A DNA stretch of 64,000 bases from Pelomyxa schiedti (Eukaryota; Protista; Evosea), in NCBI GenBank assembly GCA_020536535.1, contig JAHLWZ010000518.1:123364-187363 (forward strand), written 5' to 3'. This document shows positions 1-8,000 of the stretch, one piece after another. The notes beneath the pieces are model-generated. The model did not search any database. It worked only from the letters and a program-made list of their open reading frames with translations, and was not told where the DNA came from. A program made the position numbers and the translations under genes. Position 1 is the stretch's first letter. The number at the start of each line of letters is the position of its first letter.

Positions 1-842
1 GCCATTGTGGTGGGTCATACGGCCAGACTCAATTGCCACTGCTATTAAGTTGGGAAGTTGCTCAGGTCTAGGGTACCGTAGGCCAATTGGTGCAGCCCTC
101 ATAGCAGCACCACAACCTCTTTACAGTTTGTACAGTGATAAATCAATTGGCTTCATACCACCAGACCCTGTACTGAATGGAATTCTGTCCCACTCGGTGC
201 CATCATGCCTTATCCTGGAAACTAGGGATGTGAAAAAACAAAAAAGGTAAGAGTCACAGTAATACCTCCATGTGAACATGTACCACCTTGTAATATTTAT
301 TAAGTGGGGCAAGAAAAGCAAAAAAAAAAAAAAAAGAAGGGAGCTCTCACCAGGGGCTCTTCCACCCATATCAGACCAACATCGTTTGTAAGCCTTAGCA
401 ATACGTTGCAAAGTATGTGGGGCAGGTACAGAATCACCATCTGTCCCCTCAACAAGTCCTTCTGCAGTTGCAAGTGCCATGACAGTGTCATCTAGAAAGG
501 GGGAAAAAAAAAAGTGAGCATATTCATGAATAACGAAGAAAGGAAACGAGAAACACCTGAAACTGGAAACGTGGTTACATCCAAAGCAAAGCTGCAGGGA
601 CCCTTTCCACCTGTCCATTTCAACACCTCTTTGTGTATTCTCTGTCCCAGAATACATTAAGAAAAGAACCCACTTGGTGGTTCTGGAAGAAACTGAATGC
701 ACACTTTGCCACTAAAGTTGAACTCCCAACGGTATCCCATCCCATCACCAACTCCACTAAGAACCTGGAGATGAAAATAATAACTCAATACCCAATAGCA
801 AAAATAAAGGGGTCGCACCATCGACGCTATGTATCTGTCCAT
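1..842 (-). CDS. ADPRH: ADP-ribosylarginine hydrolase (ARH1/ADPRH family), multi-exon, 3' end runs off the window
   Basis: Spliced translation gives [84 protein letters not shown]. This is colinear with ARH1 motifs (SDDT, GRAPG, GGCGAAMR, SGRMTHH). The ORF track starts upstream at a TTG; ATG is at 842. Confidence 0.92.
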
Positions 843-1082: not shown

Positions 1083-4000
1083 ATGGTGTTTGAGGCGGTG
1101 GTGTCGTTTCTGACGTCGGCCTTCCACGACTACAAGTTGGAGGCACATTCGTTTCACTCCCTGGTGCCCTTTTTCACGGTGGTTATGCTGTTTGCCGTTG
1201 GGGGGTACTTCTCGGGATTCTTTTCGTTCCTCTCCTTGCTCGAATTCCGTAAGGAGAATCAAAGAGAGCCGACTACGCAAATTGCTCGTGTTAGGTTCAA
1301 AGACAAAGTGAGTTTCGTCGTTTTTTTTTCTTCACTTTTTCCGTACTAACAACAGCTTTCAGCTGTTTTTCAGTATTGGTGTTGTAAATGTTGCACTGTC
1401 CACATTCATAGTTGGAGTTGCACCTTCAAAGTACTATATATTTTTCACTTTAAAGGTAGGGATGTCCATGCCATTTTGGATATCAGTTTAATGCACTTCA
1501 AGTGTTGTCTTTTGCTTGGTGTACGATACATCAGTTACAGGCGTGATGGACGTCAATACTTATTCTGGGACTTTTGTAAGCCAACATAGAACATTTCAAA
1601 GTTGTCTGCTAACAAAAAGGGGACAATATTCTTGCATACAGGCTACTGGTCAAATTTCCTCTTCCTTCTCTACGTCTGGTTTTGGGACAGTAGAACAGTC
1701 TTCAGAATCTTGTTTGTTGTGGCCAATGGCCCACTTGCGTGGAGTGTCGTAGCATTTTCAAACCGCACTGTTTTCCACAACAGAGAGCAGATGACAAGCT
1801 TGTTCATTCACGTTTCACCAATGCTACTGAGCTACTGTCTTCGGTGGAACCCAAGTGCTTTTGATGTATGTGAGGGAGGAGCTTTGAATGACTGCTGGGC
1901 AAATCCTCTCTGGCTATTCCTTGGTGCACTGCTTAAGTGCTATGTGATTTGGCTTGTTTTATATTACGTTTGGGTATTTATCATCCTGGGACCACGCGCA
2001 AGAGAGAAAAAATATAAGTAACGCATCCACCTCCTTTTTTCCCCTGTTGAATTCTTTCCTCTTAGGACAATGTTTGACTGGTATACAAGTGAGGGCACTG
2101 GACAACTCATTAACCGGTTCCACCCAAATCATCTGGTCAATAAATTGCTTTACTGCATGATGCATTGTGTATGCTCCACGATTGCTCTATTTTTGGGCTC
2201 TCTTTTGTGGAACTCCCATATTGCACATTTCAGTTTTATTGTTATCATTAATCTCATTGGGATCTGGCAAGGTGCTGAACATTACTTCCAAGTAACCGTA
2301 ATTGTGAAATCTTTAAAAACCTAACATTGAACCTCAAGAGTTTTGCTCAGTCCTATGAGAAAGATTTACTGCTAAAACTTGGTCTTACGGCCACCTCCAA
2401 GCAAGGTGCCCTAGATCTCAACCATCTTGAACCTGCTATTGTGACTACTGTCAAGGGCTGGGTGTCTGCCCGAAGGGGTACTGATATCCAGGCAGCTGAT
2501 ATACCTCTTCACGCCAACCTCACAAGAGAACTGGGTTTGAATTCGATCCAAATAAGCGAGATAAAGGGGCTACTGCAGAAAGAGTTCAAAGTTGGTGAAG
2601 TAAATCTAAGCGAACTTGAAACTGTGGCTCACGTTGCTGCAATTGCATCATCACGTGGGGGAACAGCAAAATCGGAAAAAGGAGGCGAGAAAGAGGTTAG
2701 TAAACTATCAAGTAACATACTGAATTCCTGAATAATCTAAAGGTTGCACCGGAGCAATGGAATGAAAAATCCCGACTCCAACCTTCCCTACCAAGTGACC
2801 TCCAGAATATTCCTTTAGCATTCAGCCAATGTGCTTCTAGGTAAAATGTCAGTGTTGTTCCAAAAGAAACCAATCCCATCCCAGGTTTAAAAAACACGTC
2901 GCTATAGCTGATGAGATGTCTGGAGTTCTAACTTTCAAGTACAAAAAACCCCCAATTTCTCCAGTTGACACAGCACAGAAAGCTTCAGTTATCAGCATCA
3001 TTGTTTGCTGACCACATTATTGCGAATCCCGCTCTTTTTCCAGGTCGCCGCATTGGGCTCATGCTTCCTGCCTGCACACCTACAGCTATAGTACTACTGG
3101 CCCTATGGTTTGCCAAAAAAGTACCTGTGATGGTGAACTGGACATCCGGCTCCCGTAACATAAAATCAATGGTGGACTCCTCGGACTTGAAAGTTGTTAT
3201 AACATCTAGGTCATTCTTGCAAAGGTTGGGTCCAGTGGAGCTTGGGCCCCTACATGAAAAAGGTTTTCTCTTGACTCTCTCGTACCTTATTTATCAAGTC
3301 ACAAGGAGTTCTTGTTTTCCTTGAGGATATGAAAGATGGCCTATTTTATGCGAATATTCTTAAAAATATTCTCTTTTTGCATTCTGCTGCTGAAAAGTAT
3401 GATCTAAAGTCCATTAAACCACAAGATGGTAAAAAATCCTCCACGTTTTTATATTTGTTAACAGGAAGCAACAGAGGCTGTCATTCTTTTCACATCTGGA
3501 TCAGAATCAGCCCCAAAGGTACTTTCGCTTTTGTTGAAGTCATTCTTATCCAAGGCAGGGTGTGCCTCTGACTCATATGAATATCTTGAGCCTCCTGCGT
3601 GGAGTTGTTACTATGCTTCCGGTTAATAGTAGTGACATCATTCTTGCCAGTCTACCTCCCTTCCATAGCTTTGGCTTTACTTGCTGCATCGTGTATCCGC
3701 TTGTATCTGGAATTAAAACAGGTCCAAATAGCACATCAATTTTGTGATCAAGATGTAACTCCATCTAGTGTACTATCCTGCACCCACGGATTACATTGGA
3801 ATTTCTAAGTAAACCCCATGTCAACGTTTTCTCTCTGACACATTTAGACAAATTACCAAGTGGCGGCCCACAATTTACATGGGGACACCAACATTCCTTT
3901 CCGGAGTTCTGGCCAATACCCCATCTGAGGATACTGCAAGCCTCAAATATTGTATCACAGGCGCAGAGAAGACACCACAATCTCTGTTTGACGAAGTTGT

Positions 4001-4923
4001 ACTCTTTCAACCCCTTCGTTGAAACTAACGATTTCAACAGGTTGCAAGACGTCGTATAGTACCAGGCATTATTGAAGGTTACGGTATAACCGAGTGCAGC
4101 CCCATTTTGACTCTGTACCTTCTCCCATTCCCCACATGCGAAATAATATCTTCAAGGAACCCACCTGGAAAAGAGCCAGCCGGTGTAGGTTACCCCGTTC
4201 CCGGTGTGGAGATGATTTCCGTTGCCGTTGAGCCTTTCATGCAGAACCGGACGATAGTTCCTCAAAAACCTGTATGCAGTCCAAGAACCAAAACGCTCCA
4301 ACTCACAAAGAAAAGGGTCAGGAAGGCTTGCTGTTGTGCTCTGGAACCAGTATCTTTTCAGGATATCTGGGCAACACAGGCATTGATGCGTTTGTGATGT
4401 ACAACAGCAAGAGATATTATATTACTGGTGATCTTGGTTCAATACGGGCCGACGGTGCTGTCTTTTTAAGTGGAAGACTGAAAAGAGTCAAAGTTGCTGG
4501 GGAAATGATCAGCCTTGGAGCTGGTAAGAACCATACTATTTATTTATGGCGGAAAGCTAACGCAGTTGCTCGCATCAAATTGCGACCAATAATACAGTTG
4601 AAGAGGCCCTTCGTCAAGTATGGCCCAATACCAAGGAGGGAATTTCAGTTGCTGTTGAGGCCATTGAAAAAGCCGGCGAACAGCCGCAAATATGTGTTTT
4701 CAGGTAGCTAGCTCCAACCATAATTACGTATCATCACATCAACCTCTCTCGCAGTACCTGCGGAGTTACCAGGGACCAAGCAGCAGCCGTGTTGAGGGCA
4801 GCCGGATTGCCAAATATAGCACACCCCACAGTGACACTAGTTGTACCAGAAATTCCCTTGCTTGGCAGTGGAAAGGCAAATTACCCACAATTGAAGGCCC
4901 TTTTGGCAAAGCACTTGGGCTGA
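1083..4923 (+). CDS. Fusion protein: Gpc1-type glycerophosphocholine acyltransferase (DUF2838) + acyl-carrier domain + Aas-type AMP-binding acyl-ACP synthetase
   Basis: Gpc1 part: RVRFKDK..ANGPLAWSVVAFSNRTVFHNREQMTSLFIHVSP..GAEHYFQ. This joins in frame across a GT-AG intron (~2292-2338) to SFAQSYEK and an ACP-like domain (RELGLNSIQISEI). Then VAIADEMSGVLTF, IGLMLP..VPVMVNWTSG, FTSGSESAPKG..VPLTHMNI, LPPFHSFGF, EGYGITECSP, YITGDLG, GRLKR, and IPLLGSGKANY, ending at TGA 4921-4923. Confidence 0.85.
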
Positions 4924-5025: not shown

Positions 5026-8000
5026 TCACTCATTCACTTTCGTGACCAGTGTTTTTCTGGATGCTAGCTGTAAGGCTTTACGGAAGGTCTGCATGGCAAA
5101 AACAGAGGCTCCAACATAGGTAATGGCTGAAAGGAGTAGCAACCAGCAGCCCCATTGCAGCTTCACCACAACGTCAAAGCACGTGTCATCTCCATTAAGG
5201 GCTGTGTCAAAGTACTTGACCAAAATCTGGTTGATTGTGTCACAGTGTCCACCCACAATGAAGGCAACAAACTGTCCTACTTCAAGCAGAGATGCGAATA
5301 GTGCCAGTACAAAAACCTAAGGCGGGGTGAGAAATTGGGTCGAGAAAGAGTAACTGACTTCAATTCCGCCCCAGGCATTTAGGACTTCACAGAAGATGTA
5401 GAAGGCAGTATGCATTTTTGCTCTCATGGGCACAACCCACATAACGGCTAATGTGAGCATGTGCAGTATTGGAAGCATCACCGATGACGTTAGAAATACG
5501 CACTGTAGGAGTCTCACACTGAAGTCATTTGGGTTCAGACTGCTATCTGGAAGAGATAGAGCAAGACTCATAATTGAGTAGTTCTGTGAAGTAGGAATTC
5601 CGATCTCATCCAATAGCCAGCCAGCGGCTCCAGCGAACTCGAAACTGAAGGAATGTACTGAAATGCCAAGTAGAAGGAATGCTACTGACGTCAAAAGCAG
5701 CAGTTCCATACCAATGATGAGCAAAACTTTGGTAGCAATCCCCGCTTTTGGGGAAGCTGCAGAGAAAAGGGCACAAATATAATTTGGCGCCTCTTCCGTT
5801 CTTGTGAGAGCTTGATCTTCACAATAGCGGTGTAGTGCGAGTATGAGATGTGACAGACACAGTGACAGAACGGTTGCAATGAGGAAGGAAGGAAATCCAT
5901 AAAAAGGTTCCACGTATGTTTCAATCATAAAAGGAGTGTCAAAGGAATAGAGAGCTGGGTCATGCACAGGAAAAATTATTGTCATCTGAAAGGCGACCAT
6001 CATCAGTAACATGAAATACGAATCTAGGAATGACCACTTCCCCAATGCGTCTTTTTGCCAATGAGTTTGCAAAAGTTGTTGGTAATAAAATATACCTAAC
6101 ACCATCAGGCACTTCTCTCGATTCCTTACTGATAAGATTTTGCACGGAGTAATCCATAAAAGCAAGGCAGAAACGAGTTTCACAAACGGCCAAGTACCTG
6201 AAAATAATGCCAGAAGAAGAGCCAGTGGCCAGACTCCTGCTACCCACATATCCTACGTTCTTGGTTTTATCAAAGCAGGCGAAAAAGGGTGATACATGAA
6301 CACTCTCTCCAAGAGTGAAGACTATAAGGGGATCAAACGAAATAAATCTTCCTCCTCCAGTTGTGAAGGCAATAAACACACTAGCAACACCAGAAGTATT
6401 TGAAGATATGAAAAGTACAATGTTGAACAGAAGGAGAGCTGGTACCCCGATTCGCAAAGTAATATGGAGGCGCGGGTTGAGGAGCAAGGAGGGGCCAGGT
6501 GAAGGTTTCTCTTCTGCCAATAGGGGTGCTTTCTCTTCTGCCGATTGCGTATGGGAAGAAGATTTTTTTGCCCTAGCTCTAACAAACCCATATGCTATGA
6601 GATACACAAGAAGACCCAAAGATAATAAACCCGCCACGGTAAGTGAAATTCCAGTAGCTAGCATATTAGGAGCGTCTTGAGGATTTTTCTCGTCGGGAAG
6701 GTATTGACATGTTGCCTCGTTCAGATTTGTTGTAATGACATCATTAAGAGCGAAGATGATAGGATTGGAGGCAAGTCCATTAATGAGTGCAGGTATGCAG
6801 TGTGAAAATGATGAAGTAACCATTGAGGTGATGTCATTTATAAGTTCAGAAAAATCAGAGGATTGATTCACTGAAAGAGAGAGAAAGGTAGATTCGATAG
6901 AAGTACCCAGAGAAGTATACAAAGAACAGTTGGAACCCATCAGCCGAAGGAGACAATTCCAGTCTTTGCATTGGGAGTTTGTGTAATTTTGGCCATATTG
7001 CGGGAATACGGCAGCTTGAAACGAGGCGGTCAACTCTGGTTTCAGCATAGTGAGGCTGCCAACCCATTCGGAATAAAGACAAATATCTGGCGAGTTCAGG
7101 TTTGTGATGTTTAGATATGCACTAATGTTGAGTCCCAATTCATTCATTTTCGCATTTGACAACAATGAAACTTGGTCAATAGGCTCCAAAATGTCAAAAT
7201 CAGTCCAAGAATTGAGACCAAAAATGTCTATTTGGGGTATGCCCACAGTCACTTCAAGCAGCTGAAAAATGGTAAAGTGCAGGCTGAGTCGGGAAGACCG
7301 GAGCGATACCTTACCTTGAAGGAGTTATTAATTTATACACTTCAGGAAAGAGCATTACCTGTTCCATTTGACACTGCATTAAAAATTGTGTTAGTGCCCA
7401 AAGTTCCATTAATTCCAATCAGGTCGTCAAAGACGTAGCACAGAGAATTCAACAGAGCACTCTCCCGCAAGTCCATTGCTCCTGGAGGAATCAAGGGCAA
7501 CGCCAAAGGTGGTTGGAGACTTAAATAAGGTCTAATATAACTACAGATATCATCTAGTGCCCCAGATATGCCTCTAATTAAAAGAGACAAAACATCACAT
7601 ATTGCGATCTCCAGAACTACTTCAGTATTGTGGTACGTTTCATTGCTCTCAAGAATTATGTCTTCTACTCTCTGTGCCAAATCACTGGTCCCATTTACAG
7701 AGAGTAATGCAATGGTGAGATTAGTCCCACATGTTCCGTTTTCCAACTGAGAAAAACATTGGCCAAATGGATCAACAGCAAGTCCCATGACAAAGTGAAT
7801 CATAGTGTCGACTACATCGATTGTCATTGTTCCTGTTCCACTGTCAGTGATTTTTCCGTGCTGATTTCTCTCCACAATTGATGTGTCGCCCACACATTTC
7901 AGCTTTGTGAAGTTCAAATGAATAGTGATTGTTTCTTGGTTCGCACTCAACAAAGAGTTGGCCCCACCAACGGTGAGGTCGAAGCAAGACAAATTAGCAC

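What the first reader, a model, noticed from the sequence alone, without database searches (positions are those of the whole stretch)
1083..4923. Gpc1 acyltransferase-ACP-acyl-ACP synthetase fusion: candidate one-protein phospholipid salvage system
Seen in sequence: three recognisable modules splice into one frame with no stop, using ordinary GT-AG introns (GAEHYFQ|SFAQSYEK; EKE|VAPEQW; TFK|KLQL). Established: bacterial Aas couples an acyl-ACP synthetase to a PlsC-type lysophospholipid acyltransferase, while eukaryotic Gpc1/GPCAT acylates glycerophosphocholine, normally with acyl-CoA. Here the PlsC domain is absent and an unrelated eukaryotic membrane acyltransferase takes its place, with a carrier domain tethered between the two enzymes. 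I do not know of this architecture being described. Inference: fatty acid is adenylated, loaded on the internal phosphopantetheine arm and handed to Gpc1 to make lyso-PC without CoA. That would suit an anaerobe scavenging lipids from prey.
Basis: partly seen in the sequence, partly recalled or inferred. Interest (0 to 1): 0.85.

Follow-up and report, generated by a model that had tools for sequence, protein, structure and literature searches.

The report
Amoeba Gpc1–carrier–fatty-acid-activating enzyme fusion
A real 19-exon gene of the amoeba Pelomyxa schiedti joins a eukaryotic glycerophosphocholine acyltransferase to a bacterial-type carrier domain and fatty-acid-activating enzyme, probably a self-contained lipid re-acylation machine; it is rare and uncharacterised, but it already sits in databases and is not limited to anaerobes.

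Summary
Nineteen exons (1083-4923, +) joined by 18 GT-AG introns of 39-74 nt translate exactly into the 991-aa NCBI protein 'AMP-binding protein [Pelomyxa schiedti]'. Its domains are DUF2838/Gpc1 (aa 74-183), a carrier domain (aa 380-433, Ser400) and an AMP-binding domain (aa 478-849). The AMP-binding domain scores far higher against Aas/acyl-ACP-ligase models than against CoA-ligase models.

The same fused ORF occurs in a Mastigella eilhardi transcript, in Bigelowiella natans, in two MMETSP/JGI transcript contigs, and probably on one Logan contig. It is therefore conserved and transcribed, rare, already in databases, and not anaerobe-specific.

The carrier was not newly inserted. The carrier+synthetase pair is collinear (35-41% identity over about 600 aa) with a large bacterial family, found here, of architecture PlsC-carrier-AAS (Chlamydiota and other PVC phyla, Bdellovibrionota, Cloacimonadota). 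In the eukaryotes Gpc1 replaced PlsC.

The family-invariant Cys131/His187, Ser400 and the adenylation motifs are all intact. The proposed mechanism (fatty acid, then acyl-AMP, then acyl-S-pantetheine on the carrier, then Gpc1 Cys, then lyso-PC or lyso-PE) is well supported by inference but untested. I rate it a new variant of a known kind, interest about 0.6.

The parts
1083..4923 (+). Whole gene: 19 exons, 18 GT-AG introns, 991-aa product (P0001). Exons: 1083-1307, 1363-1455, 1503-1575, 1642-2017, 2066-2291, 2339-2695, 2743-2840, 2885-2938, 2979-3262, 3306-3428, 3475-3518, 3559-3721, 3769-3808, 3848-3995, 4041-4114, 4157-4271, 4316-4523, 4598-4703, 4755-4923.
   Evidence: The spliced translation is identical to the NCBI P. 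schiedti protein.
1083..2291 (+). Exons 1-5, aa 1-331: Gpc1/GPCAT membrane domain (DUF2838 at aa 74-183, about 8 long helices).
   Evidence: Pfam 99.2 bits. AF2 model has mean pLDDT 88 and pTM 0.80. All residues conserved at 85% or more across 100 family members are retained.
1575..1643 (+). Codon of Cys131 (DFCY motif), split by intron 3 (base 1575 plus bases 1642-1643). This is the predicted catalytic nucleophile.
   Evidence: 100% conserved in 100 family members. A Cys/His dyad is predicted for the GPC1 family in bioRxiv 10.1101/2022.07.06.498872.
1809..1811 (+). Codon of His187 (SLFIH motif), the predicted catalytic histidine.
   Evidence: 100% conserved.
2339..2695 (+). Exon 6 (phase 0-0), aa 332-450: junction helix plus the complete carrier (PP-binding) domain.
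   Evidence: Pfam PP-binding 26.6 bits on the exon alone. AF2 gives a four-helix model, pLDDT 82-89 over aa 360-439. All of the top 50 Foldseek hits are ACPs or carrier domains, most with rmsd 1.5-2.1 A.
2543..2545 (+). Codon of Ser400 (LGLNS), the predicted phosphopantetheine attachment site at the start of helix II.
   Evidence: Invariant in 4 eukaryotic fusions and 3 bacterial carriers. It aligns with the Ser of LGMDSL in P0152.
2743..4923 (+). Exons 7-19, aa 451-991: flexible linker (with a conserved PxxW) and the Aas-type acyl-ACP synthetase (adenylation) domain.
   Evidence: Pfam AMP-binding 195 bits. NCBIfam PRK08633 354 bits and PRK06334 309 bits, against 183 bits for the best CoA ligase model. 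Motifs TSGSESAPKG, EGYGITE, TGD, GR and GK are invariant.
4873..4875 (+). Codon of Lys976 (GSGKA), the conserved C-terminal adenylation lysine.
   Evidence: Invariant in alignments A1 and A3.

Best explanation
This is a genuine single gene for a three-part enzyme. It is an Aas-like fatty-acid salvage enzyme in which the bacterial PlsC acyltransferase has been replaced by the eukaryotic membrane acyltransferase Gpc1. Shown here: the gene structure, the three domains, intact catalytic residues, conservation of the fusion in other eukaryotes, and common ancestry of the carrier+synthetase pair with bacterial PlsC-carrier-AAS proteins. Inferred mechanism: the C-terminal domain adenylates a free fatty acid with ATP and loads it as a thioester on the phosphopantetheine arm of Ser400. 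The carrier is tethered by linkers of about 20 and about 35 residues. It swings to the Gpc1 domain, where Cys131 (with His187) takes the acyl group and passes it to a glycerophosphodiester (GPC, perhaps GPE). The product is a lysophospholipid, made without free acyl-CoA or a separate ACP.
For: The gene model equals the NCBI protein. Domains were confirmed by Pfam. The fused ORF is complete in a Mastigella eilhardi Trinity transcript at 52% identity. It is uninterrupted on a 3433-nt JGI contig and present in Bigelowiella natans and in an MMETSP transcript. The synthetase is Aas-type. A single collinear BLASTP alignment, aa 392-986 against bacterial P0152 residues 291-871, gives 35% identity and E 2e-100 and starts at the carrier motif. 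At least 596 bacterial loci are related; the best 80 are mostly PlsC(HX4D)-LGxDSL-AAS proteins. In the tree, the eukaryotic fusions plus the carrier-bearing bacterial proteins separate from classical Aas with SH-aLRT 100. The carrier has an ACP fold with Ser400 at the start of helix II. Gpc1 residues Cys131 and His187 are invariant. A Cys nucleophile is predicted for this family, which fits thioester-to-thioester transfer. E. coli Aas does not release its acyl-ACP intermediate (PMC5693948).
Against: There is no biochemical data. The Asp of the usual DSL carrier motif is Asn here, and Gln or Thr in the chlorarachniophyte copies. The PP-binding score is only just above the cut-off here and is below it (14.9 bits) in B. 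natans. No phosphopantetheinyl transferase was looked for in the genome. Characterised Gpc1 enzymes use acyl-CoA or lyso-PC as acyl donor (PMC5122774); none is known to accept a carrier-bound acyl group. No transcript evidence from Pelomyxa itself was examined.
Confidence: 0.6

Rival explanations
1. The synthetase makes free acyl-CoA next to Gpc1. The carrier-like segment is a degenerate, unmodified linker inherited from the bacterial ancestor, so the fusion only provides local substrate channelling of acyl-CoA.
For: The Asp before the Ser is lost in all eukaryotic copies. Pfam scores for PP-binding are weak: 22.2 bits here and 14.9 bits in B. natans. Known Gpc1 enzymes use acyl-CoA.
Against: Gly397, Ser400 and the downstream TV motif are invariant across Amoebozoa, Rhizaria and bacteria. 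The ACP fold is predicted with confidence. The adenylation domain scores about 170 bits higher on Aas models than on any CoA ligase model. It also sits in the carrier-bearing Aas clade.
Confidence: 0.2
2. The carrier-bound acyl group is handed to another enzyme in trans, or the Gpc1 domain works mainly as a lyso-PC:GPC transacylase or as a membrane anchor. In that case the two halves are co-localised but not directly coupled.
For: Gpc1 enzymes have acyl-CoA-independent transacylase activity. Other carrier-dependent megasynthases are noted in this genome by earlier scan notes, which I did not check.
Against: The exact domain order matches bacterial PlsC-carrier-AAS, in which coupling is the established logic. 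The Gpc1 catalytic residues are conserved in every fusion. The Gpc1 and AAS trees each group the fusions together, which suggests the halves co-evolved as one unit.
Confidence: 0.12
3. Gene-model artefact: two adjacent genes (Gpc1, and carrier-AAS) wrongly merged.
For: Retaining intron 5 would end a stand-alone Gpc1 after 10 extra codons. No Pelomyxa cDNA was inspected here.
Against: The gap between the modules is a 47-nt GT-AG intron in phase 0, leaving no room for a terminator and a promoter. The same fusion is a complete ORF in transcript assemblies of other species.
Confidence: 0.03

Closest known systems
Bacterial bifunctional Aas (2-acyl-GPE acyltransferase / acyl-ACP synthetase; NCBIfam PRK08043, PRK08633, PRK06814), often with the LplT transporter
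   Same: It has the same type of adenylation domain. It follows the same logic of activating a free fatty acid and passing it, without release, to a lysolipid-forming or lysolipid-consuming acyltransferase in the same polypeptide. The acyltransferase is N-terminal and the synthetase C-terminal.
   Different: There is no PlsC/HX4D domain; a non-homologous, eukaryote-only membrane acyltransferase sits in its place. The expected acceptor is a fully deacylated glycerophosphodiester rather than a lysophospholipid. E. coli Aas uses a separate ACP.
   Same: The carrier+linker+AAS region is collinear at 35-41% identity over about 600 aa, including the G..S carrier motif and the PxxW linker motif. They form one clade against classical Aas.
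   Different: The N-terminal module is PlsC, with or without MFS, instead of Gpc1. The carrier motif is LGxDSL, against LGLNS here. They are bacterial and lack introns.
Gpc1/GPCAT (yeast Gpc1, plant GPCAT; Pfam PF10998)
   Same: The full domain is present with every family-conserved residue, including Cys131, His176 and His187.
   Different: Known members are stand-alone proteins of about 300-450 aa that use acyl-CoA or lyso-PC as donor. This one carries its own carrier and activating enzyme. The fusions also share a junction motif, W-x-x-AEHYF, whose Glu and His are rare in the wider family (4% and 7%).
Chlamydia trachomatis AasC (CT776) plus lysophospholipid acyltransferase CT775
   Same: An acyl-ACP synthetase of the same family (PRK06334 scores 309 bits) feeds a lysolipid acyltransferase.
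   Different: These are separate proteins with a free ACP, and the reaction is uncoupled (PMC5693948).

Membership tests
Gpc1/GPCAT (PF10998, DUF2838) | Match to the family profile above the curated cut-off | tested here: met
   99.2 bits against a cut-off of 25.2, profile positions 1-111.
Gpc1/GPCAT (PF10998, DUF2838) | Invariant Cys (DFCY) and His (FIH) of the predicted catalytic dyad | tested here: met
   C131 and H187 are 100% conserved in 100 family members and present here. The dyad prediction comes from bioRxiv 10.1101/2022.07.06.498872.
Gpc1/GPCAT (PF10998, DUF2838) | Multi-pass helical membrane fold | tested here: inconclusive
   The AF2 model has pLDDT 88 with about 8 long helices. 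No solved structure of this fold is in the PDB to compare with: Foldseek TM-scores are about 0.15.
Gpc1/GPCAT (PF10998, DUF2838) | Acylation of GPC (or GPE) to a lysophospholipid | not testable with these tools
   Needs an enzyme assay.
Acyl/peptidyl carrier domain (PF00550) | Profile match above the cut-off | tested here: met
   22.2 bits on the whole protein and 26.6 bits on exon 6, against a cut-off of 20.8. This is marginal, and the B. natans copy scores only 14.9 bits.
Acyl/peptidyl carrier domain (PF00550) | Four-helix bundle with the Ser at the N-terminus of helix II | tested here: met
   Helices lie at aa 363-377, 400-414 and 427-437, with a short turn at 421-423. The top 50 Foldseek hits are all ACPs or carrier domains, most with TM-score (normalised to the target) 0.73-0.84.
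Acyl/peptidyl carrier domain (PF00550) | Canonical D-S-L attachment motif | tested here: not met
   The motif is LGLNSI here, and VGMQSI and LGMTSI in the chlorarachniophyte copies. Gly and Ser are invariant and the Asp is lost. From my own knowledge, PCP-type carriers also lack this Asp.
Acyl/peptidyl carrier domain (PF00550) | Phosphopantetheinylation, and a PPTase in the genome | not tested
   There are no scan notes on a PPTase, and the genome cannot be searched with the remaining tools.
Aas-type acyl-ACP synthetase (ANL superfamily) | AMP-binding domain with intact core motifs (TSGSxxxPKG, YGxTE, TGD, GR, GK) | tested here: met
   195 bits. The motifs are invariant in alignments A1 and A3.
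Aas-type acyl-ACP synthetase (ANL superfamily) | Closer to Aas/AasC models than to acyl-CoA ligases | tested here: met
   PRK08633 354 bits, PRK06814 327, PRK06334 309 and PRK08043 244, against 183 for the best CoA ligase model. The clade is supported at SH-aLRT 100. The scores are below the equivalog cut-offs, which require the whole bacterial protein.
Bifunctional Aas (PlsC + AAS) | PlsC-type acyltransferase domain with the HX4D motif | tested here: not met
   No PF01553 match in P0001, whereas 20 of 20 bacterial relatives have one. The protein works like an Aas but is not a member in the strict sense.

The most novel reading that the evidence does not exclude
This would be the first enzyme of the Gpc1/TMEM164/AIG1 superfamily fed by a covalently tethered acyl-pantetheine. 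That gives a CoA-independent, single-polypeptide route from free fatty acid plus a glycerophosphodiester to a lysophospholipid. It would have arisen when a bacterial carrier-AAS pair was grafted onto a eukaryotic acyltransferase, and then been shared between Archamoebae and chlorarachniophytes by eukaryote-to-eukaryote transfer.
Probability: 0.45. Interest if true: 0.72.

Novelty: new variant of a known kind. Interest (0 to 1): 0.6.

Why it matters
The fusion is natural 'Rosetta stone' evidence that a Gpc1-type acyltransferase can be served by an Aas-type fatty-acid activating module. It shows two non-homologous acyltransferases (PlsC and Gpc1) plugged into the same carrier-synthetase chassis. 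It predicts a CoA-independent way to rebuild phospholipid from the fully deacylated head-group backbone. It also offers a tethered-substrate system for testing the proposed Cys/His acyl-enzyme mechanism of the Gpc1 family, for which no structure exists. The work further uncovers a large, apparently undescribed bacterial family of Aas proteins with a built-in carrier, especially in Chlamydiota and other PVC bacteria. That bears on how those bacteria salvage host or environmental fatty acids.

Tried and rejected
- A Foldseek search of the Gpc1-domain model against the PDB gave only noise (GPCRs, TM-scores about 0.15).
- A PDB sequence search with the carrier-AAS part found only generic ANL enzymes and no Aas structure.
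- The metagenome scan for more fusions returned 18 Gpc1 loci. I opened only the best, L083, because its match seemed to reach the carrier region. It is a stand-alone 373-aa Gpc1 that ends in a stop.
- Word-indexed protein searches are not exhaustive: the profile search missed P0044 itself. The count of fusion-bearing species is therefore a lower bound.
- My first hand-built exon 1 boundary (1289) was wrong. The correct donor is GTGAGT at 1308.
- Literature searches for GPCAT + acyl-ACP synthetase, PF10998 + AMP-binding, Bigelowiella + glycerophosphocholine, and Aas + ACP domain found no description of the architecture.
- The merged-gene artefact and bacterial contamination were considered and rejected. 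The gene has spliceosomal introns, Gpc1 is a eukaryote-only family, and the fused ORF is conserved in transcripts.
- The donor lineage could not be resolved: the eukaryotic clade is sister to all 79 sampled bacterial sequences.
Full report
**Observation.** The region is an intron-rich eukaryotic gene. I derived the exons by hand and by an exhaustive donor/acceptor search. I then corrected exon 1 against the database protein. The final model has 19 exons (1083-4923, + strand) and 18 introns. All introns are GT-AG, 39-74 nt long and 28-45% G+C, against 45% for the exons. Thirteen of them hit an in-frame stop if read through. An in-frame stop lies 17 codons upstream of the start ATG.

The spliced CDS translates to a protein identical to P0001. 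P0001 is a 991-aa entry that NCBI names 'AMP-binding protein [Pelomyxa schiedti]', encoded on a 187-kb contig. An earlier scan note had named the organism; one search confirms it independently. The high intron density agrees with the 7.4 introns per gene and 98.4% GT-AG reported for this genome (PMC8887013).

**Domains.** Pfam finds three domains on P0001:
- DUF2838/Gpc1, aa 74-183, 99.2 bits.
- PP-binding, aa 380-433, 22.2 bits against a cut-off of 20.8 (26.6 bits on exon 6 alone).
- AMP-binding, aa 478-849, 195 bits.

No PlsC domain is present.

NCBIfam places the C-terminal domain with the Aas family. Scores are PRK08633 354 bits, PRK06814 327, PRK06334 (long-chain fatty acid--[ACP] ligase) 309 and PRK08043 (E. 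coli-type Aas) 244. The best acyl-CoA ligase model scores 183 bits. The adenylation core motifs are invariant in the alignments, including TSGSESAPKG, EGYGITE, TGD, the GR arginine and the C-terminal Lys976.

**The carrier.** An AF2 model of aa 330-480 gives pLDDT 82-89 over aa 360-439. It has the ACP topology, and Ser400 sits exactly at the start of helix II. The segments on either side have low confidence, as expected for flexible tethers. All 50 best Foldseek matches in the PDB are acyl carrier proteins or carrier domains. Most have rmsd 1.5-2.1 A over about 75 columns and TM-scores of 0.73-0.84 normalised to the target.

Gly397, Ser400 and a downstream Thr-Val are invariant across the four eukaryotic fusions and three bacterial carriers. 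The Asp that usually precedes the Ser is Asn, Gln or Thr in the eukaryotes.

**The Gpc1 domain.** In an alignment of 100 family members, C131, Y132, G160 and H187 are 100% conserved and H176 is 99% conserved. The Pelomyxa protein departs from no position that is conserved at 85% or more.

A preprint that defined the AIG1/TMEM164/GPC1 superfamily predicts a Cys/His catalytic dyad for GPC1. It also showed that the equivalent Cys of TMEM164 is needed for an acyl-enzyme type transfer (bioRxiv 10.1101/2022.07.06.498872). The DFCY Cys and the FIH His are the obvious candidates here.

An AF2 model of aa 1-350 is confident (pLDDT 88, pTM 0.80) and shows about eight long helices. No solved structure resembles it.

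Published Gpc1 enzymes acylate GPC with acyl-CoA and acylate GPE at about 25% of that rate. They also transacylate from lyso-PC. The family was reported to be absent from prokaryotes (PMC5122774).

**Is the fusion real and conserved?** An exhaustive HMMER search with the 124-aa exon 4 found P0001 itself and, among the top 150 hits, one other tri-domain protein, P0044 (1032 aa). P0044 is an uninterrupted ORF on a 3433-nt JGI contig.

Word-indexed searches added three more:
- P0151, a complete ORF in a Trinity transcript of Mastigella eilhardi (EukProt; 52% identity over 97% of the query).
- P0168, an MMETSP transcript.
- P0184, the Bigelowiella natans gene model jgi|Bigna1|80076 (1007 aa).

All have DUF2838, a carrier-like segment and AMP-binding in the same order.

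The nearest other Gpc1 sequence, P0011, lies on a 5-kb Logan contig. There a DUF2838 gene, a 100-aa gene and an AMP-binding gene follow each other on one strand within 3.4 kb. This is most likely a sixth copy split up by prokaryote-style gene calling; its DNA could not be fetched.

The fusion is therefore transcribed as one ORF in relatives. It is rare, it is already present in public data, and it is not confined to anaerobes, since B. natans is an aerobic alga.

**Origin.** BLASTP aligns P0001 aa 392-986 in one collinear block with residues 291-871 of the bacterial protein P0152 (35% identity, E 2e-100). The block starts at the carrier motif. P0152 has a weak PlsC match with an HX4D motif, then PP-binding, then AMP-binding. 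An overlapping MFS gene precedes it.

A scan of 185,579 prokaryotic species genomes with the carrier+AAS alignment gave at least 596 related loci. The best 80 are 36-41% identical over about 600 aa that include the carrier. They come mainly from:
- Chlamydiota (37 of the rows used in the tree);
- Lentisphaerota, Verrucomicrobiota and Planctomycetota;
- Bdellovibrionota and Cloacimonadota.

Their ORFs are mostly 870-950 aa. A majority show an HX4D motif near residue 45, and most carry LGxDSL near residue 310. About ten are roughly 1280-1320 aa. Pfam on 20 of them finds Acyltransferase and AMP-binding in 20/20, PP-binding in 16/20 and MFS in 4/20.

In a maximum-likelihood tree of the carrier+AAS region, the four eukaryotic proteins group together (SH-aLRT 87). 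Together with the carrier-bearing bacterial proteins they are separated from classical carrier-less Aas at SH-aLRT 100. The donor lineage is unresolved.

In the Gpc1 tree, the four fusions plus P0011 form one clade (SH-aLRT 97). An AU test does not reject the fusions as a clade (p 0.685).

The simplest history has three steps. A bacterial PlsC-carrier-AAS gene entered a eukaryote. Its carrier-AAS part became joined to a resident Gpc1. The fused gene was then inherited or transferred between Archamoebae and chlorarachniophytes. The direction of transfer is inferred from the breadth of the bacterial family, not proven.

**Mechanism.** The following points are shown: the domain order, intact residues, flexible tethers, the Aas-type synthetase, the ACP fold, and homology to proteins in which a carrier sits between an acyltransferase and the same synthetase.

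The established background is that E. coli Aas forms acyl-ACP and passes it to its acyltransferase domain without releasing it (PMC5693948).

The inferred relay is fatty acid + ATP, then acyl-AMP, then acyl-S-pantetheine on Ser400, then acyl-S-Cys131, then an ester on GPC or GPE. The thioester donor offered by a holo-carrier is chemically the same pantetheine thioester as in acyl-CoA (my own knowledge). A Gpc1 active site that accepts acyl-CoA could therefore plausibly accept it.

The acceptor head group, the actual modification of Ser400 and the subcellular location remain unknown.

**Rivals.**
- The carrier is a relic and the enzyme makes acyl-CoA locally (0.2).
- The two halves are co-localised but not directly coupled (0.12).
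- The gene model is an artefact (0.03).

**Novelty.** I found no paper that describes the architecture. Public annotation calls it only 'AMP-binding protein'. It is a new variant of a known kind: an Aas-like salvage enzyme with a swapped, non-homologous acyltransferase module. Three details do not: that the carrier was inserted here, that the architecture is absent from databases, and that it is an adaptation to anaerobiosis.

Noticed in passing
L003-L082 (bacterial loci), e.g. L040:2984-5815, L003:322-4200: There is a large bacterial family of Aas-like proteins with a built-in carrier domain (PlsC-ACP-AAS, about 870-950 aa). About ten of the 80 loci encode longer forms of roughly 1280-1320 aa, and MFS was confirmed in the four of these I tested (MFS-PlsC-ACP-AAS). 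At least 596 loci were found, concentrated in Chlamydiota and other PVC phyla, Bdellovibrionota and Cloacimonadota. I found no description of it in the searchable literature.
   Followed up: partly
window 2265-2291 (aa 323-331) and the same columns of A1/A4: All fusion proteins share a motif W-x-x-A-E-H-Y-F at the end of the last Gpc1 helix, directly before the linker. Its Glu and His occur in only 4% and 7% of 100 family members. It may be a docking or hand-over element specific to the fused enzymes.
   Followed up: no
window 2292-2338 (intron 5) and 2339-2695 (exon 6): Exon 6 is a symmetric phase 0-0 exon that encodes exactly the junction helix and the carrier domain. Retaining intron 5 would stop translation after 10 codons and yield a stand-alone Gpc1 of about 341 aa. 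That isoform is possible and worth looking for in RNA data.
   Followed up: no
window 1575|1642-1643: The codon of the predicted catalytic Cys131 is split by intron 3 (phase 1).
   Followed up: no
window 121-699 (-) and 5317-7252 (-): The neighbours look unrelated. Upstream, a minus-strand ORF has a weak ADP-ribosylglycohydrolase match (21 bits, below the cut-off). Downstream, two overlapping long minus-strand ORFs of a hydrophobic protein have no Pfam match. ARAGORN found no tRNA gene in the whole window.
   Followed up: partly
P0066 (820 aa), P0068, P0069, P0140: Other unusually long Gpc1-family proteins exist without an AMP-binding domain. P0066 has two DUF2838 stretches. P0069 (1002 aa) has a long low-complexity C-terminal tail.
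   Followed up: partly
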